Positions 1 to 6,951 of a stretch of 6,951 bases of DNA are shown here, piece after piece. Position 1 is the stretch's first letter. Each line of letters opens with the position of its first letter. A model generated the notes under the pieces. It was given only the letters and a program-made list of their open reading frames with translations. It did not search any database and had not been told where the DNA came from. A program made the translations under genes and the position numbers. The DNA is from Octopus sinensis (taxonomy: Eukaryota), in contig NW_021828850.1 in the NCBI RefSeq assembly GCF_006345805.1, positions 1 to 6,951 on the forward strand. The letters run 5' to 3'.

Positions 1-513
1 AATTAACAACTGATGCCGGCAGTTTGTTCCATGTTTGCTGCGTGTGTATGGAGGTGAGGAAATCAGGTGTAGTGTGGCGAATCTCAGAAAGCATGGAAGT
101 TTTGAAGGATGCAGTGCTCAGACAATTAACAACTGATGCCGGCAGTTTGTTCCATGCTTGTGTGTGTATGGAGGGGAGGAAATCAGGTGTAGTGTTGGCG
201 AATCTCAGGAAGCATGGAAGTTTTGTAAGGATGCAGTGCTCCGACAACTAACAACTGATGCCGGCAGGTTGTTCCATGCTTGAGTGTGTATGGAGGGGAG
301 AAAATCAGGTGTAGTGTTGGCGAATCTCAGAAAGCATGGAAGTTTTGAAGGATGCAGTGCTCAGACAATTAACAACTGATGCCGGCAGTTTGTTCAATGC
401 TTGCGTGTGTATGGAGGGGAGGAAATCAGGTGTAGTGTTGGCGAATCTCAGGAAGCATGGAAGTTTTGAAGGATGCAGTGCTCCGACAACTAACAACTGA
501 TGCCGGCAGTTTG

Positions 514-583
514 TTCCATGCTTGTGTGTGTATGGAGGGGAGAAAATCAGGTGTAGTGTTGGCGAATCTCAGGAAGCATGGAA
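514..583. repeat. Perfect 10-bp inverted repeat TTCCATGCTT / AAGCATGGAA (example copy; recurs in monomers carrying the consensus)
   Basis: TTCCATGCTT at 514-523 and AAGCATGGAA at 574-583 (monomer positions 29-38 and 89-98). The arms alternate in orientation every 60/61 bp along the array. Confidence 0.9.
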
Positions 584-3282
584 GTTTTGAAGGATGCAGT
601 GCTCCGACAACTAACAACTGGTGCCGGCAGGTTGTTCCATGCTTGAGTGTGTATGGAGGGGAGAAAATCAGGTGTAGTGTTGGCGAATCTCAGAAAGCAT
701 GGAAGTTTTGAAGGATGCAGTGCTCAGGCAATTAACAACTGATGCCGGCAGTTTGTTCCATGCTTCCGTGTGTATGGAGGGGAGAAAATCAGGTGTAGGG
801 TTGGCGAATCTCAGGAAGCATGGAAGTTTTGAAGGATGCAGTGCTCCGACAACTAACAACTGATTCCGCCAGTTTGTTCCATGCTTGTGTGTGTATGCAG
901 GGGAGGAAATCAGGTGTAGTGTTGGCGAATCTCAGGAAGCATAGAAGTTTTGAAGGATGCAGTGCTCCGACAACTGACAACTGATGCCGGCAGTTTGTTC
1001 CATGCTTGTGTGTGTATGGAGGGGAGAAAATCAGGTGTAGTTTTGGCGAATCTCAGGAAGCATGGACGTTTTGAAGGATGCAGTGCTCCGACAACTAACA
1101 ACTGATGCCGGCAGTTTGTTCCATGCTTGTGTGTGTATGGAGGGGAGAAAATCAGGTCTAGTGTTGGCGAATCTCAGTATGCATGGAAGTTTTGAAGGAT
1201 GAAGTGCTCCAACATTTAACAACTAATGCCGGCAGTTTGTTCCATGCTTGCGTGTGTATGGAGGGGAGGAAATCAGGTGTAATGTTGGCGAATCTCAGGA
1301 AGCATGGAAGTTTTGAAGGATGCAGTGCTCAGTCAATTAACAACTGATGCCGGCAGGTTGTTCTATGCTTGTGTTTGTATGGAGGGGTAGAATTCAGGTG
1401 TAGTGTTGGCGAATCTCAGGAAGCATGGACGTTTTGAAGGATGCAGTGCTCCGACAACTAACAACTGATGCCGGCAGGTTGTTCCATGCTTGAGTGTGTA
1501 TGGAGGGGAGAAAATCAGGTGTAGTGTTGGCGAATCTTAGAAATCATGGAAGTTTTGAAGGATGCAGTGCTCCGACAACTAACAACTGATGCCGGCAGTT
1601 TGTTCCATGCTTGCGTGTGTATGGAGGGGAGGATATCAGGTGTAGTGTTGGCGAATCTCAGAAAGCATGGAAGTTTTGAAGGATGCAGTGCTCCGACAAC
1701 TAACAACTGATGCCTGTAGTTTGTTCCATGCTTGTGTGTGTATGGAGGGGAGAAAATCAGGTGTAGTGTTGGCGAATCTCAGAAAGCATGAAAGTTTTGA
1801 AGGATGCAGTGCTCCGACAATTAACAACTGATGCCGGCAGTTTGTTCCATGTTTGTGTGTGTATGGAGGGGAAGAAATCAGGTGTAGTATTGGCTAATCT
1901 CAGGAAGCATGGACGTTTTGAAGGATGCAGTGCTCAGACAATTAACAACTGATGCCTGCAGTTTGTTCCATGCTTGTGTGTGTATGGAGGGGAGGAAATC
2001 AGGTGTAGTGTTGGCTAATCTCAGAAAGCACGGAAGTTTTGAAGGATGCAGTGCTCAGACAATTAACAACTGATGCCGGCAGTTTGTTCCATGTTTGTGT
2101 GTGTATGGAGGGGAGGAAATCAGGTGTAGTGTTGGCGAATCTCAGAAAGCATGGAAGTTTTGAAGGATGCAGTGCTCAGACAATTAACAACTGATGCCGG
2201 CAGTTTGTTCCATGTTTGCTGCGTGTGTATGGAGGGGAGGAAATCAGGTGTAGTGTTGGCGAATCTCAGAAAGCATGGAAGTTTTGAAGGATGCAGTGCT
2301 CAGACAATTAACAACTGATGCCGGCAGTTTGTTCCATGTTTGCTGCGTGTGTATGGAGGGGAGGAAATCAGGTGTAGTGTTGGCGAATCTCAGAAGCATG
2401 GAAGTTTTGAAGGATGCAGTGCTCAGACAATTAACAACTGATGCCGGCAGTTTGTTCCATGTTTGCTGCGTGTGTATGGAGGGGAGGAAAACAGGTGTAG
2501 TGTTGGCGAATCTCAGAAAGCATGGAAGTTTTGAAGGATGCAGTGCTCAGACAATTAACAACTGATGCCGGCAGTTTGTTCCATTTTTGCGTGTGTATGG
2601 AGGGGAGGAAATCAGGTGTAGTGTTGGCGAATCTCAGAAAGCATGGAAGTTTTGAAGGATGCAGTGCTCAGACAATTAACAACTGATGCCGGCAGTTTGT
2701 TCCATGTTTGCTGCGTGTGTATGGAGGGGAGGAAATCAGGTGTAGTGTTGGCGAATCTCAGAAAGCATGGACGTTTTGAAGGATGCAGTGCTCAGACAAT
2801 TAACAACTGATGCCGGCAGTTTGTTCCATGCTTGTGTGTGTATGGAGGGGAGGAAATCAGGTGTAGTGTTGGCGAATCTCAGAAGGCATGGAAGTTTTGA
2901 AGGATGCAGTGCTCAGACAATTAACAACTGATGCCGGCAGTTTGTTCCATGTTTGCTGCGTGTGTATGGAGGGGAGGAAATCAGGTGTAGTGTTGGCGAA
3001 TCTCAGAAAGCATGGAAGTTTTGAAGGATGCAGTGCTCAGACAATTAACAACTGATGCCGGCAGTTTGTTCCATGCTTGTGTGTGTATGGAGGGGAGGAA
3101 ATCAGGTGTAGTGTTGGCGAATCTCAGAAAGAATGGAAGTTTTGAAGGATGCAGTGCTCAGACAATTAACAACTGATGCCGGCAGTTTGTTCAATGCTTG
3201 CGTGTGTATGGAGGGGAGGAAATCAGGTGTAGTGTTGGCGAATCTCAGAAAGTATGGAAGTTTTGAAGGATGCAGTGCTCAG

Positions 3283-6200
3283 ACAATTAACAACTGATGC
3301 GGCAGTTTGTTCCATGTTTGTGTGTGTAGGGAGGGGGAAATCAGGTGTAGTGTTGGCGAATCTCAGAAAGCATGGAAGTTTTGAAGGATGCAGTGCTCAG
3401 ACAATTAACAACTGATGCCGGCTTTGTTCCATCCTGTGTTGCTGCGTGTGTATGGAGGGGAAGAATCAGGTGTAGTGTTGGCGAATCTCAGGAAGCATGG
3501 AAGTTTAAGGATGCAGTGCTCCGACAACAATTAACAACTGATGCCGGCAGTTTGTTCCATGTTTGCTGTGTGTGGTGGAGGTGGAAGGAAATCAGTGTAG
3601 TGTTGGCTAATCTCAGAAAGATGAAGTTTTGAAGGATTGCAGTGCTCAGACATTAACAACTGATGGGCAGTTTGTTCCATGCTGTGTGTGTATGAAAGGA
3701 GAAAATCAGGTGTAGTGTTGGCGAATCTCAGAAAGCATGGAAGTTTTGAAGATGCAGTGCTCAGACAATTAACAACTGATGCCGGCATTTTTTCCATGCT
3801 TGTGTGTGTATGGAGGGAGGAAATCAGGTGTAGTGTTGGCGAATCTCAGAAAGCATGGAAGTTTTGAAGGATGCAGTCTCAGACAATTAACAACTGATGC
3901 CGGCAGTTTGTTCCATGTTGCTTGCGTGTGTATGGAGGGGAGGAAATCAGGTGTAGTGTTGGCGAATCTCAGAAAGCATGGAAGTTTTGAAGGATGCAGT
4001 GCTTAACATTACAACTGATGCCGGCAGGTTTTCCATGTTGTGTGTGTATGGAGGGGAGGAAATCAGGTGTAGTGTTGGCGAATCTCAGGAAGCATGGAAG
4101 TTTTGAAGGATGCAGTGCTCAGACAATTAACAACTGATGCCCGCAGTTTGTTCCATGCTTGTGTGTGTATGGAGGGAGGAAATCAGGTGTAGTGTTGGCG
4201 AATCTCAGAAAGCATGGAAGTTTTGAAGGATGCAGTGCTCCGAACAATTAACAACTGATGCCGGCAGTTTGTTCCATGTTTGTTTGTGTATGGAGGGGAG
4301 GAAATCAGGGGTAGTGTTGGCGAATCTCAGAAAGCATGGAAGTTTTGAAGGATGCAGTGCTCAGACAATTAACAACTGATGCCGGCAGTTGTTCCATGTT
4401 TGTGTGTGTATGGAGGGGAGGAAATCAGGTGTAGTGTTGCGAATCTCAGAAAGCATGAAAGTTTTGAAGGAGGCAGTGCTCAGACAACTAACAACTGATG
4501 CCGGCAGTTTGTTCCATGTTTGCTGCGTGTGTATGGAGGGGAGAAAATCAGGTGTAGTGTTGGCGAATCTCAGAAGCATGAAAGTTTTGAAGATGCATGC
4601 TCAGACAATTAACAACTGATGCCGGCAGTTTGTTCCATGCTTGCGTGTGTATGGAGGGGAGGAAATCAGGTGTGTGTTGGCGAATCTCAGAAAGCATGGA
4701 AGTTTTGAAGGATGCAGTGCTCAGACAATTAACACTGATGCCGGCAGTTTGTTCCATGCTTGCGTGTGTATGGAGGGGAGGAAATCAGGTGTAGTGTTGG
4801 CGAATCTCAGAAGCATGGAAGTTTTGAAGGATGCAGTGCTCAGACAATTAACAACTGATGCCGGCAGTTTGTTCCATGTTTGTGTGTGTATGGAGGGAGG
4901 AAATCAGTGTAGTGTTGGCGAATCTCAGAAAGCATGGAAGTTTTGAAGGATGCAGTGCTCAGACAATTAACAACTGATGCCGGCAGTTTGTTCCATGTTT
5001 GTGTGTGTATGGAGGGGTGGAAATCAGGTGTAGTGTTGGCGAATCTCAGAAAGCATGGAAGTTTTGAAGGATGCAGTGCTCAGACAATTAACAACTGATG
5101 CCGGCAGTTTGTTCCATGTTTGCTGCGTGTGTATGGAGGGGAGGAAATCAGGTGTAGTGTTGGCGAATCTCAGGAAGCATGGAAGTTTTGAAGGATGCAG
5201 TGCTCAGACAATTAACAACTGATGCCGGCAGTTTGTTCCATGTTTGCTGCGTGTGTATGGAGGGGAGGAAATCAGGTGTAGTGTTGGCTAATCTCAGAAA
5301 GCATGGAAGTTTTGAAGGATGCAGTGCTCAGACAATTAACAACTGATGCCGGCAGTTTGTTCCATGCTTGTGTGTGTATGAAGGGGAGGAAATCAGGTGT
5401 AGTGTTGGCGAATCTCAGAAAGCATGGAAGTTTTGAAGGATGCAGTGCTCAGACAATTAACAACTGATGCCGGCAGTTTGTTCCATGCTTGTGTGTGTAT
5501 GGAGGGGAGGAATCAGGTTGTAGTGTTGGCGAATCTCAGAAGCATGGAAGTTTTGAGGATGCAGTGCTCAACAATTAACAACTGATGCCGGCAGTTTGTT
5601 CCATGTTTGCTGCGTGTATGGAGGGGAGGAAATCAGGTGTAGTGTTGGCGAATCTCAGAAAGCATGGAAGTTTTGAAGGATGCAGTGCTTACAATTAACA
5701 ACTGATGCCGCAGTTTGTTCCATGTTTGTGTGTATGGAGGGGAGGAATCAGGTGTAGTGTTGGCGAATCTCAGGAAGCATGGAAGTTTTGAAGGATGCAG
5801 TGCTCAGACAATAACAACTGATGCCGCAGTTTGTTCCATGCTTGCGTGTGTATGGAGGGGAGGAAATCAGGTGTAGTGTTGGCGAATCTCAGAAAGCATG
5901 GAAGTTTTGAAGGATGCAGTGCTCAGACAATTAACAACTGATGCCGGCAGTTTGTTCCATGTTTGTGTGTGTATGGAGGGGAGGAAATCAGGTGTAGTGT
6001 TGGCGAATCTCAGAAAGCATGGAAGTTTTGAAGGATGCAGTGCTCAGACAATTAACAACTGATGCCGGCAGTTTGTTCCATGTTTGTGTGTGTATGGAGG
6101 GGAGGAAATCAGGTGTAGTGTTGGCGAATCTCAGAAAGCATGAAAGTTTTGAAGGATGCAGTGCTCAGACAATTAACAACTGATGCCGGCAGTTTGTTCC

Positions 6201-6534
6201 ATGTTTGCTGCGTGTGTATGGAGGGGAGGAAATCAGGTGTAGTGTTGGCGAATCTCAGAAAGCATGAAAGTTTTGAAGGATGCAGTGCTCCGACAACTAA
6301 CAACTGATGCCGGCAGTTTGTTCCATGCTTGCGTGTGTATGGAGGGGAGGAAATCAGGTGTAGTGTTGGCGAATCTCAGAAAGCATGAAAGTTTTGAAGG
6401 ATGCAGTGCTCCGACAACTAACAACTGATGCCGGCAGTTTGTTCCATGCTTGCGTGTGTATGGAGGGGAGGAAATCAGGTGTAGTGTTGGCGAATCTCAG
6501 AAAGCATGAAAGTTTTGAAGGATGCAGTGCTCAG
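3283..6534. repeat. Higher-order duplication: monomers 28-40 (3283-4843) correspond to monomers 42-54 (4963-6534), 14-monomer period
   Basis: Rare variants recur in the same order at an offset of about 1681-1686 bp: TCAGGA 3488/5170, GGCTA 3605/5286, TATGAA 3691/5377, GTGCTT 3999/5685, TCAGGA 4085/5770, CATGAAA 4454/6139 and 4577/6263. The +3 variant occurs in M29/43, M30/44, M33/47 and M38/52. Confidence 0.85.
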
Positions 6535-6716
6535 ACACAATTAACAACTGATGCCGGCATTTGTTCCATGCTTGTGTGTGTATGGAGGGGAGAATATCAG
6601 GTGTAGTGTTGGCGAATCTCAGAAAGCATGAAAGTTTTGAAGGATGCAGTGCTCGACAATTAACAACTGATGCCGGCAGTTTGTTCCATGCTTGCGTGTG
6701 TATGGAGGTGAGGAAA

Positions 6717-6834
6717 TCAGGTGTAGTGTTGGCGAATCTCAGAAAGCATGAAAGTTTTGAAGGATGCAGTGCTCAGACAATAACACTGATGCCGGCAGTT
6801 TGTTCCATGCTTCAGCAACTTCACACGTGAAAAA
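6717..6834 (-). mobile_element. Degenerate C-terminal fragment of a CR1/L2-type non-LTR retrotransposon ORF2, spanning the flank and the terminal repeat unit; putative parent of the satellite monomer
   Basis: Minus-strand translation from 6834 gives FFTCEVAEAWNKLPASV. In intact monomers it continues VNCLSTASFKTSMLSEIRQHYT*, with TGA at plus-strand TCA 6717-6719 in this copy. The spacing FF-x7-W-N-x-L-P-x2-V-V-x3-S-x3-F-K matches the CR1-clade ORF2 C-terminal motif as I recall it (pattern like FFSNRVVNAWNSLPxxVVxAxSxxxFK). This copy has two 1-bp deletions at about 6780-6786 and an in-frame TGA just upstream (6835-6837). Not confirmed by a search. Confidence 0.6.
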
Positions 6835-6951
6835 TCATATAGGAAATGAATAGAGAAAATTAATTTGGTGGATTATTACAATACATAGTACAACAGGTCA
6901 CATATCGACAAATGGAAACTTGAAATTTCGAAGGAAATTATGATGTGCGCC
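6813..6951. other. Unique AT-rich flank; no ORF; the first ~22 bp are probably LINE-derived
   Basis: It does not match the monomer. The minus-strand frame continuing from the array has stops at 6835-6837 and 6898-6900. Confidence 0.8.

What the first reader, a model, noticed from the sequence alone, without database searches (positions are those of the whole stretch)
1..6812. The satellite monomer encodes the C-terminal signature of a CR1/L2-type LINE ORF2
Seen: the minus strand of every consensus monomer reads (Q)AWNKLPASVV[N/S]C[L/R]STASFKTSML[S/P]EIRQHYT* (for example the ORF at 305-496). Established: CR1-, L2- and related LINE ORF2 proteins end in a conserved W-N-x-L-P-x-x-(V/I)-V-x3-S-x3-F-K motif shortly before the stop codon. 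W, N, L, P, V, V, S, F and K all fall at the expected spacing here. Inference: the 121-bp satellite was amplified from the last ~33 codons of a LINE plus a short stretch of 3' sequence. TE-derived satellites are known in general, but this family may be undescribed.
Basis: partly seen in the sequence, partly recalled or inferred. Interest (0 to 1): 0.7.

Follow-up and report, generated by a model that had tools for sequence, protein, structure and literature searches.

The report
Octopus satellite born from LINE tail
This 6.8-kb block of 121-bp tandem repeats is non-coding satellite DNA, most likely from the common octopus, copied from the last 31 codons, stop codon and first 22 bases of trailer of a jumping gene (a CR1-group LINE); it is a clean new example of a known way that satellites arise.

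Summary

- **Array:** window 1-6812 is a 121-bp tandem array of 56.3 copies. The minus strand of its consensus reads QAWNKLPASVVNCLSTASFKTSMLSEIRQHYT*.
- **Source:** the peptide is 31/31 identical to the C-terminus of an Octopus vulgaris LINE fragment. One monomer variant is 118/121 identical at DNA level to that LINE.
- **LINE identity:** relatives carry Pfam RVT_1 and the same tail within one protein. The element ends in a ~150-nt 3'UTR with an (ATT)n tail, as in CR1-group LINEs. The exact clade is unresolved.
- **Chance excluded:** a profile of seven distant LINE tails scores the monomer 20.2 bits, against a maximum of 6.6 in 1000 shuffles.
- **What the monomer is:** an internal LINE segment. 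In the LINE, GAAGCATG occurs twice exactly 121 nt apart, and the satellite junction lies in that repeat.
- **Links to the LINE:** the array edge (6813-6834) continues 22 nt further into LINE ORF2. An O. vulgaris locus shows a LINE copy running directly into 6.9 units.
- **Not coding:** there is a stop in each unit, 121 is not a multiple of 3, about 26 of 56 frames are broken, and there is no third-position excess.

Verdict: a new member of a known kind (LINE-derived satellite), of moderate interest.

The parts
1..6812 (-). Tandem array of the 121-bp (variants 115-131 bp, common sub-variant 124 bp) LINE-derived satellite, 56.3 copies; it runs off the left end of the window
   Evidence: TRF. Monomer alignment. 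Junction variants. No higher-order periodicity: identity falls smoothly from 0.920 to 0.904 over lags 1-12.
429..521 (-). Representative monomer: 31 codons AWNKLPASVVSCRSTASFKTSMLPEIRQHYT inherited from the end of LINE ORF2
   Evidence: ORF list and tail table. 31/31 identical to the C-terminus of O. vulgaris P0008.
426..428 (-). The LINE ORF2 stop codon (TGA), retained in each monomer
   Evidence: Same position as the stop in L001 8364-8366.
404..425 (-). First 22 nt of the LINE 3'UTR (TTTCCTCCCCTCCATACACACG) retained in the monomer
   Evidence: Alignment of the window with L001 copy B. Multiple alignment of LINE tails.
516..528 (-). Monomer-to-monomer junction CACAC-AAGCATGG, lying in the short direct repeat (GAAGCATG) that occurs twice in the parent LINE
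   Evidence: GAAGCATG at L001 8268 (ORF) and 8389 (3'UTR), exactly 121 nt apart. Junction variants tabulated.
6813..6834 (-). 22 nt of further LINE ORF2 sequence at the array edge (TTTTTCACGTGTGAAGTTGCTG, reading FFTxxVAE), upstream of the first monomer
   Evidence: Local alignment with L001. blastx FFTCEVAEAWNKLPASV against FFTLRVAEAWNKLPASVV.
6835..6951 (.). AT-rich unique flank with no detectable LINE or satellite similarity
   Evidence: blastx and blastn of the flank against the LINE proteins and all fetched loci gave only chance-level hits.

Best explanation
The window holds a non-coding satellite array, most likely from Octopus vulgaris or a very close relative. Its 121-bp unit is an internal piece of a resident CR1-group LINE: the last 31 codons of ORF2, the stop codon and the first 22 nt of the 3'UTR.

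Shown:
- In the parent LINE the octamer GAAGCATG occurs twice in direct orientation. One copy is at the codons for E-A-W, the other 22 nt after the stop, exactly 121 nt apart.
- The monomer-monomer junction lies inside this repeat.

Inferred:
- A slippage, unequal sister-chromatid exchange or microhomology-mediated repair event between the two octamers in one LINE copy made the first duplication.
- Unequal crossing-over and gene conversion then expanded and partly homogenised the array to at least 56 copies.

The reading frame is a fossil. Nothing in the array is expected to be translated, and the array has no demonstrated function beyond being satellite DNA.
For: 1. Array anatomy is given.
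2. The peptide has significant, specific matches to LINE tails. phmmer gave E = 4e-7 to 3e-5. P0003 ends at the same residue and carries the upstream VRPHLEF...VQRRAT...YSERL...TRGH...FFTLR region. P0008 from O. vulgaris is 31/31 identical.
3. DNA identity to the LINE is 118/121 for the LINE-like monomer variant and 114/121 for the majority consensus.
4. The tail belongs to a reverse-transcriptase ORF. The L002 piece carries KYADDIKLY. P0024 and P0032 carry both RVT_1, above Pfam's cut-off, and the tail. P0027, P0030 and L006 carry RVT_1. In L006 the RT and tail pieces are contiguous.
5. The profile-HMM test gave 20.2 bits against a shuffle maximum of 6.6.
6. The LINE 3'UTR continues about 130 nt beyond the part kept in the monomer and ends in (ATT)n. 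The monomer is therefore an internal segment.
7. GAAGCATG lies at L001 8268 and 8389, 121 nt apart.
8. The array edge continues 22 nt further into LINE ORF2.
9. In L005 a 5'-truncated LINE copy runs straight into 6.9 copies of the unit. The LINE-proximal junctions keep more ORF sequence (ACACGCTGAAGCATGG) and the distal junctions are of the window type (ACACACAAGCATGG).
10. There is no coding constraint. Each unit has a stop, 121 is not divisible by 3, only about 30 of 56 frames are intact, and substitutions at codon positions 1/2/3 number 62/56/33.
Against: - Only one LINE copy in hand (L001 copy B) has both octamers intact. Copy A has CAAGCATG in the UTR, copy C has CAAACACG, and the O. sinensis copy has diverged there. 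The 121-nt spacing therefore rests on one copy.
- Two junction types exist, a 121-bp and a 123-124-bp type. A single crossover point does not explain every unit.
- The distal end of the window's array was not seen, and the distal end of the L005 array abuts another LINE. It is therefore not shown that any array arose where it now lies.
- The host species is inferred from sequence identity only.
- Genomic abundance and chromosomal location are unknown.
Confidence: 0.85

Rival explanations
1. The arrays did not each expand where they lie. A LINE variant or transcript that already carried the tandem units was copied by the LINE machinery, through 5'-truncated retrotransposition or reverse-transcriptase template switching. 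This seeded arrays at new loci, which then grew locally.
For: - Two loci have the same structure, LINE ORF2 followed by the array, but with different lengths of upstream LINE: about 550 nt in L005 and 22 nt in the window. This is the pattern of variable 5' truncation.
- Both loci share the same derived junction type ACACACAAGCATGG and the CCGGC variant.
- In L005 the block [LINE fragment + 6.9 units + a second, 5'-truncated CR1-group LINE tail + (AACT)n] is co-oriented. It is flanked by TTACTAC at 6108 and 7888, exactly at its two ends, which is a possible target-site duplication.
Against: - The 7-nt match lies in TAC-rich, low-complexity sequence and could be chance.
- No array has yet been seen ending in the LINE's own 3'UTR and (ATT)n tail.
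- Only two loci were available.
- Segmental duplication followed by deletion would give similar pictures.
Confidence: 0.25
2. The unit is a severely 5'-truncated whole LINE 3' end with a (CA)n tail, and the array arose by repeated head-to-tail insertion or by template jumping from one LINE 3' end to the next.
For: Read on the minus strand, each unit starts at AAGCATGG and ends in CACACAC. The array edge at 6812/6813 falls at that phase. CR1-group LINEs do end in short repeats.
Against: - The real LINE continues for about 130 nt after the CACACA stretch and ends in (ATT)n (L001 B and C, L002, L003b, L007). The monomer therefore lacks the LINE's 3' terminus.
- The array edge carries 22 nt more of ORF2 than a monomer does.
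Confidence: 0.03
3. The resemblance to a LINE tail is chance, or the array is a real protein-coding tandem gene.
For: The motif is short. ORFs of 54-96 aa exist on both strands.
Against: - The peptide is 31/31 identical, and the DNA 97.5% identical, to an Octopus LINE.
- The HMM test separates the real monomer from all 1000 shuffles.
- Every unit has a stop, the frame shifts by one base per unit, about 26 of 56 units are broken, and substitutions show no third-position excess.
- There were no Rfam or tRNA matches.
Confidence: 0.01

Closest known systems
Chicken HinfI tandem repeat with an embedded CR1 fragment (Li and Leung 2006, as summarised in PMC9659126)
   Same: A tandem repeat whose unit contains the 3'UTR and a partial ORF2 of a CR1-family LINE. 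It has the same class of parent element and the same region of it.
   Different: - The host is a bird, not a cephalopod.
- There the CR1 piece is embedded in a longer repeat unit, whereas here the whole 121-bp unit is LINE sequence.
- Here the breakpoints, the microhomology and a LINE-attached short array are visible.
Common cetacean satellite, PROsat (Phodopus) and Pvc20 (seal), all derived from L1
   Same: These satellites have monomers derived from the 3' part or the ORF2 of a LINE (PMC9659126).
   Different: The parent is L1, which has a poly(A) tail and belongs to a different clade, and the hosts are mammals. No CR1-group C-terminal motif is involved.
CR1-group LINEs (CR1, L2, Rex1, Daphne, Crack, Kiri; definition in PMC13343379)
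   Same: The parent element has an RT followed by the conserved C-terminal region ending in W-N-x-L-P...F-K just before the stop, and a 3' end made of a short microsatellite rather than poly(A). That the motif marks CR1 and L2 is recalled from my own knowledge. It was tested here only against unnamed relatives.
   Different: The window contains only a 121-bp fossil of the element, not an element. Which clade of the group the octopus LINE belongs to was not determined, and no copy with the endonuclease domain was retrieved.
Ascaris 120/121-bp germline-restricted satellite
   Same: The unit length is the same (PMC5741062).
   Different: This is a coincidence of length only. The window's relatives are Octopus sequences at 94-99% DNA identity. 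No sequence comparison with the Ascaris repeat was made.

Membership tests
Satellite DNA (tandem repeat array) | Long head-to-tail array of one unit with high inter-copy identity | tested here: met
   56.3 copies of a 121-bp unit over 6.8 kb at 93% matches. The array runs off the window.
Satellite DNA (tandem repeat array) | Present at more than one locus, or abundant in the genome | tested here: inconclusive
   A second, 6.9-copy array is present in O. vulgaris L005. Genome-wide abundance could not be measured. Metagenome scans found nothing.
Transposable-element-derived satellite | The monomer is homologous over its full length to a segment of a dispersed element | tested here: met
   118/121 identity to L001 8270-8390. 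Single dispersed copies occur in L001 A/B/C, L002, L003 a/b, L004, L006 and L007.
Transposable-element-derived satellite | Transitional forms link the element and the array | tested here: met
   In L005 a LINE copy continues into 6.9 units. The window array edge keeps 22 nt of extra ORF2 sequence.
LINE (non-LTR retrotransposon) ORF2, as the parent of the monomer | Reverse-transcriptase domain in the same ORF as the tail | tested here: met
   RVT_1 is above Pfam's cut-off in P0032 (53.4 bits) and P0024 (31.7 bits), and both also carry the tail. A YADD motif is in the L002 piece. RT and tail are contiguous in L006.
LINE (non-LTR retrotransposon) ORF2, as the parent of the monomer | Apurinic/apyrimidinic endonuclease domain at the N-terminus | not tested
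   All retrieved copies are 5'-truncated. No full-length element was obtained.
CR1-group LINE (CR1/L2/Rex1 and allies) | Conserved C-terminal region ending in W-N-x-L-P-x2-(V/I)-V-x3-S-x3-F-K shortly before the stop | tested here: met
   The monomer scores 20.2 bits on an HMM of seven distant tails, and 0 of 1000 shuffles reach that score. The upstream VRPxLE(F/Y)...VQRRAT...Y(S/E)ERL...TRGH...FF block is present in P0003 and P0007. That this block is diagnostic of CR1/L2 rests on my memory.
CR1-group LINE (CR1/L2/Rex1 and allies) | 3' end formed by a short tandem (microsatellite-like) repeat, not poly(A) | tested here: met
   Copies end ...CAATAATTTCATT(ATT)n in L001C, L003b and L007.
CR1-group LINE (CR1/L2/Rex1 and allies) | Placement of the RT domain inside the group, and in a named clade, by phylogeny with Repbase/Dfam references | not testable with these tools
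   No Repbase or Dfam library was available. Source names say only 'jockey-like RNA-directed DNA polymerase' or 'Tick transposon'.
Protein-coding gene | Open frame maintained by purifying selection | tested here: not met
   There is a stop in each unit, the unit length is not divisible by 3, and about 26 of 56 frames are broken. Substitutions at codon positions 1/2/3 number 62/56/33.

The most novel reading that the evidence does not exclude
The 121-bp array is not only derived from the LINE but is also spread by it. Transcripts of a LINE copy carrying the array would be reverse-transcribed, with 5' truncation or template switching onto another LINE's cDNA, to seed new arrays. The L005 composite insertion flanked by TTACTAC would be one such event and the window's array another. 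This LINE tail would then be a recurrent generator and disperser of satellite DNA in octopus genomes.
Probability: 0.25. Interest if true: 0.6.

Novelty: new member of a known kind. Interest (0 to 1): 0.4.

Why it matters
Satellites derived from transposable elements are known, but the founding event can rarely be read from the sequence. Here the parent LINE, both breakpoints, the 8-nt direct repeat at exactly the unit spacing, a short LINE-attached array and a long array are all available. This makes a compact textbook case for how a coding fragment of a retrotransposon becomes satellite DNA.

It also has a practical side. Gene and repeat annotation of cephalopod genomes will otherwise report these arrays as dozens of small 'reverse-transcriptase-like' ORFs. 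No description of cephalopod satellite DNA was found in the held literature, so the family may be worth adding to repeat libraries.

Tried and rejected
- **Word-indexed protein search:** a search with a 40-aa monomer peptide found nothing, because no candidate shared three 5-residue words.
- **RNA searches:** Rfam at E<=1 and tRNA scans gave one sub-threshold lncRNA hit and no tRNA.
- **Ascaris lead:** the length coincidence with the Ascaris 121-bp eliminated satellite was followed. It was dropped once Octopus relatives at 94-99% DNA identity appeared.
- **Whole-3'-end hypothesis:** the idea that the unit is a 5'-truncated whole LINE 3' end with a (CA)n tail was rejected, because the LINE 3'UTR runs on for about 130 nt and ends in (ATT)n.
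- **Pfam on tails:** Pfam on tail-only fragments gave no family. The tail region is not modelled in Pfam.
- **PDB:** a sequence search with P0032 gave only marginal hits.
- **Metagenome scans:** two exact-pattern scans of JGI metagenome contigs for the junction and for a conserved monomer segment gave 0 hits.
- **Window ORF look-ups:** two window ORFs were looked up to recover the source contig, and neither is on record.
- **Literature:** searches for an octopus or cephalopod satellite and for the WNxLP motif found nothing relevant.
- **Higher-order repeats:** none was found, apart from a short run of alternating 124/121-bp units.
Full report
**1. Observation**

Tandem Repeats Finder reports a single array at window 1-6812, with period 121, 56.3 copies, 93% matches and 2% indels. 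Splitting on a conserved anchor gives 56 units of 115-124 bp, mostly 121 bp, with a recurrent 124-bp sub-variant. The last 139 bases (6813-6951) are not repeated.

The reverse complement of the consensus reads ...HTQAWNKLPASVVNCLSTASFKTSMLSEIRQHYT*, followed by FPPLHTHT. An S-C-R...P type dominates at roughly 126-1700, and an N-C-L...S type dominates elsewhere.

'Every monomer' is true of the consensus only. About 30 of the 56 units keep the whole 32-codon frame, and the others carry indels or stops. The ORF quoted at 305-496 exists but has W changed to L.

**2. Is the motif more than chance?**

A word-indexed protein search found nothing, because no candidate shared three 5-residue words with the query. 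An exhaustive phmmer search of the 32-aa peptide (window 2739-2834, minus strand) against 1.84 billion representative proteins returned four hits. Their E-values were 4.1e-7 to 3.4e-5 and their identities 69-77%.

One hit, P0003 (148 aa), ends at exactly the same residue...FFTLRIAETWNKLPASVVGCRSTESFKASMLPVVRRHYT. Upstream it carries VRPHLEFASPVWNPY...LEAVQRRATR...YSERL...TRGH. From my own knowledge, this is the conserved post-RT region of CR1/L2-like ORF2 proteins.

I then built a profile HMM from seven distant tails (P0013, P0017, P0018, P0019, P0024, P0028, P0032; none above 49% identity to the octopus family in the search tables). I scored six-frame translations of the consensus monomer and of 1000 dinucleotide-preserving shuffles. 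The real monomer scores 20.2 bits on the minus strand. The shuffles gave mean -3.1, sd 1.8 and maximum 6.6.

**3. Host and parent element**

Searching with P0003 returned proteins from Octopus sinensis and Octopus vulgaris. Their source names include 'RNA-directed DNA polymerase from mobile element jockey-like' and 'Tick transposon'.

- P0008 (O. vulgaris) ends ...FFTLRVAEAWNKLPASVVSCRSTASFKTSMLPEIRQHYT. This is 31/31 identical to the S-C-R...P monomer variant.
- At DNA level that variant is 118/121 identical to the LINE segment L001 8270-8390, and 120/121 identical to the consensus of a short array in O. vulgaris (L005).
- The majority consensus of the window is 114/121 identical to the LINE.

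The window therefore most likely comes from O. vulgaris or a very close relative. This is an inference from identity; the source contig itself was not found.

**4. The tail belongs to a LINE reverse transcriptase**

- The O. sinensis copy (L002) has an open piece of 283 codons that starts with ...KYADDIKLY, the RT active-site motif, and ends in the tail.
- Searching with that piece found O. bimaculoides 'jockey-like' proteins with PF00078. It also found P0024 and P0032, which carry both RVT_1 and a WNxL tail in one chain.
- A direct Pfam scan confirmed RVT_1 above the curated cut-off for P0032 (53.4 bits), P0024 (31.7), P0027 (64.9), P0030 (46.8) and the L006 piece (46.1).
- In L006 the RT piece and the tail pieces are contiguous in one decayed copy.

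All copies retrieved are 5'-truncated, so the endonuclease domain was not seen.

Aligning eight 3' ends shows that the element continues about 150 nt after the stop. It ends ...CAATAATTTCATT(ATT)n, which is a microsatellite tail and not poly(A). This agrees with a CR1-group LINE as defined in PMC13343379. The clade within the group is unresolved for lack of reference libraries.

**5. What exactly was amplified, and how**

The monomer corresponds to LINE codons A-W-N...H-Y-T (31 codons), the TGA stop, and the first 22 nt of the 3'UTR (TTT(T/C)CTCCCCTCCATACACAC). It lacks the remaining ~130 nt of UTR and the (ATT)n tail. It is therefore an internal segment, not a truncated whole 3' end. That rejects my first idea, which was suggested by the CACACA end of the unit.

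In L001 copy B the octamer GAAGCATG occurs at 8268 (GCT GAA GCA TGG = A E A W) and again at 8389 in the UTR (ACACAGAAGCATGTATC). The two are exactly 121 nt apart. The satellite junction, CACAC(A/G)CAAGCATGGAAC, has UTR sequence on its left, ORF sequence on its right, and the shared AAGCATG in between.

A direct repeat sitting at both breakpoints with the unit's own spacing is the expected signature of slippage, unequal exchange or microhomology-mediated repair. This step is inferred.

Two caveats apply:
- Only copy B has both octamers intact. Copy A has CAAGCATG in the UTR and copy C has CAAACACG.
- A second junction type retains more ORF sequence (ACACGCTGAAGCATGG in L005; ACACGCAGCAAACATGG in the window's 124-bp units). 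Either the exchange point varied, or the junction was later remodelled.

**6. Links between element and array**

At the right edge of the window's array, the minus strand reads TTTTTCACGTGTGAAGTTGCTG|AAGCATGGAAC..., that is FFTxxVAE-AWNKLP. This is 22 nt more of LINE ORF2 than a monomer contains. Further out (6835-6951) there is no LINE similarity.

In O. vulgaris locus L005, a 5'-truncated LINE copy (about 6115-6794) runs without interruption into 6.9 units (6665-7495; TRF period 121, 93% matches). Its LINE-proximal junctions are the ORF-rich type and its distal ones are the window type.

Single, non-tandem copies of the tail are found in O. vulgaris (L001 A, B and C), O. sinensis (L002), O. 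bimaculoides (L006) and ENA contigs (L003, L004, L007). More than twenty separate protein fragments also carry it.

**7. Not coding**

- Each unit has the LINE stop codon.
- 121 is 3 x 40 + 1, so the frame shifts from unit to unit.
- About 26 of 56 units are broken.
- Substitutions relative to the consensus number 62, 56 and 33 at codon positions 1, 2 and 3. This is the opposite of what purifying selection on a protein would give.
- There is no Rfam or tRNA signal.
- Inter-unit identity falls smoothly with distance, from 0.920 at lag 1 to 0.904 at lag 12, with no higher-order period.

**8. Rival and more novel reading**

L005's array ends inside a unit and abuts a different, co-oriented, 5'-truncated CR1-group LINE tail (...WNKLPDEMVKMLTTARFKVSLDQKW...*) that has an (AACT)n end. 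The whole block is bracketed by TTACTAC at 6108-6114 and 7888-7894, exactly at its two ends. This may be a target-site duplication. If so, the block is one retrotransposition event in which the enzyme switched templates onto a transcript of an array-bearing LINE.

Two further observations fit that reading. The two loci carry different lengths of upstream LINE (about 550 nt against 22 nt). They also share the same derived junction type. This keeps open the possibility that arrays are seeded at new sites by the LINE machinery.

The 7-nt match lies in TAC-rich sequence and only two loci were available, so I give this reading about 0.25.

**9. Comparison with what is known**

LINE-derived satellites are documented. 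Examples are the chicken HinfI repeat containing CR1 3'UTR and partial ORF2, the common cetacean satellite from the L1 3' end, and PROsat and Pvc20 from L1 ORF2 (review PMC9659126). The present case is the same kind of thing in a cephalopod, with an unusually legible origin.

I found no description of an octopus or cephalopod satellite in the held literature. Repbase and Dfam could not be consulted. The equal length to the Ascaris 120/121-bp eliminated satellite is a coincidence.

**10. Verdict**

This is a new member of a known kind, of moderate interest (0.4).

My confidence that the satellite is non-coding and derived from this LINE segment is about 0.95. My confidence is about 0.6-0.7 for the microhomology founding event specifically. 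The figure of 0.85 given for the best explanation covers the statement as a whole.

Noticed in passing
window 126-1700 versus 1700-6812: Two monomer variants occupy different parts of the array. The LINE-like S-C-R...P type (118/121 to the LINE) is concentrated far from the LINE-bearing edge. The derived N-C-L...S type fills most of the rest, including the units next to that edge. This is the reverse of a simple 'oldest units at the edge' picture.
   Followed up: partly
window 2184-3165: There is a short run in which 124-bp units (junction ACACGCAGCAAACATGG) alternate with 121-bp units. This may be an incipient 245-bp dimer repeat. No array-wide higher-order period was found.
   Followed up: partly
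window 3288-4130: This stretch holds noticeably more degenerate units: many small indels, unit lengths of 115-131 bp and lower identity to the LINE (81-86%). It could be an older core of the array or a region of lower assembly quality.
   Followed up: no
window 1-6812: Strand asymmetry is strong and constant, with GC skew of +0.33 to +0.42 on the plus strand. Each unit has a GGAGGGGAGG tract, which is the complement of the LINE's CCTCCCCTCC 3'UTR.
   Followed up: no
L005 7496-7890 (O. vulgaris CATOCA020000001.1): A second, unrelated 5'-truncated CR1-group LINE tail (...WNKLPDEMVKMLTTARFKVSLDQKW...*) with an (AACT)n end abuts the distal end of the 6.9-unit array, in the same orientation. TTACTAC occurs at both ends of the composite block (6108 and 7888), which is a possible target-site duplication.
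   Followed up: partly
L001 7716-8560 (O. vulgaris OX597841.1): Two 5'-truncated tails of the same LINE lie head to tail with a different period of about 390 bp. The 3'UTR position ...ATCTGAC is joined to the ORF position AACCAAGAGA. So this LINE's 3' region has undergone tandem duplication more than once, at different breakpoints. The locus sits inside a cluster of C2H2 zinc-finger repeats.
   Followed up: partly
L007 1-530 (ENA ERZ27277065 contig): An inverted partial LINE tail is followed by a forward 5'-truncated tail, giving a head-to-head arrangement. This explains why protein P0004 starts with a reverse-strand reading of the same sequence.
   Followed up: no
L003, L004, L007 (ENA metagenome assemblies ERZ26693861, ERZ23500404, ERZ27277065): Relatives of this LINE at about 80% DNA identity to the O. 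vulgaris copy (L003, L004) turn up in assemblies labelled as metagenomes. Their source organism was not determined, but animal host or prey DNA in those samples is the likely explanation.
   Followed up: no
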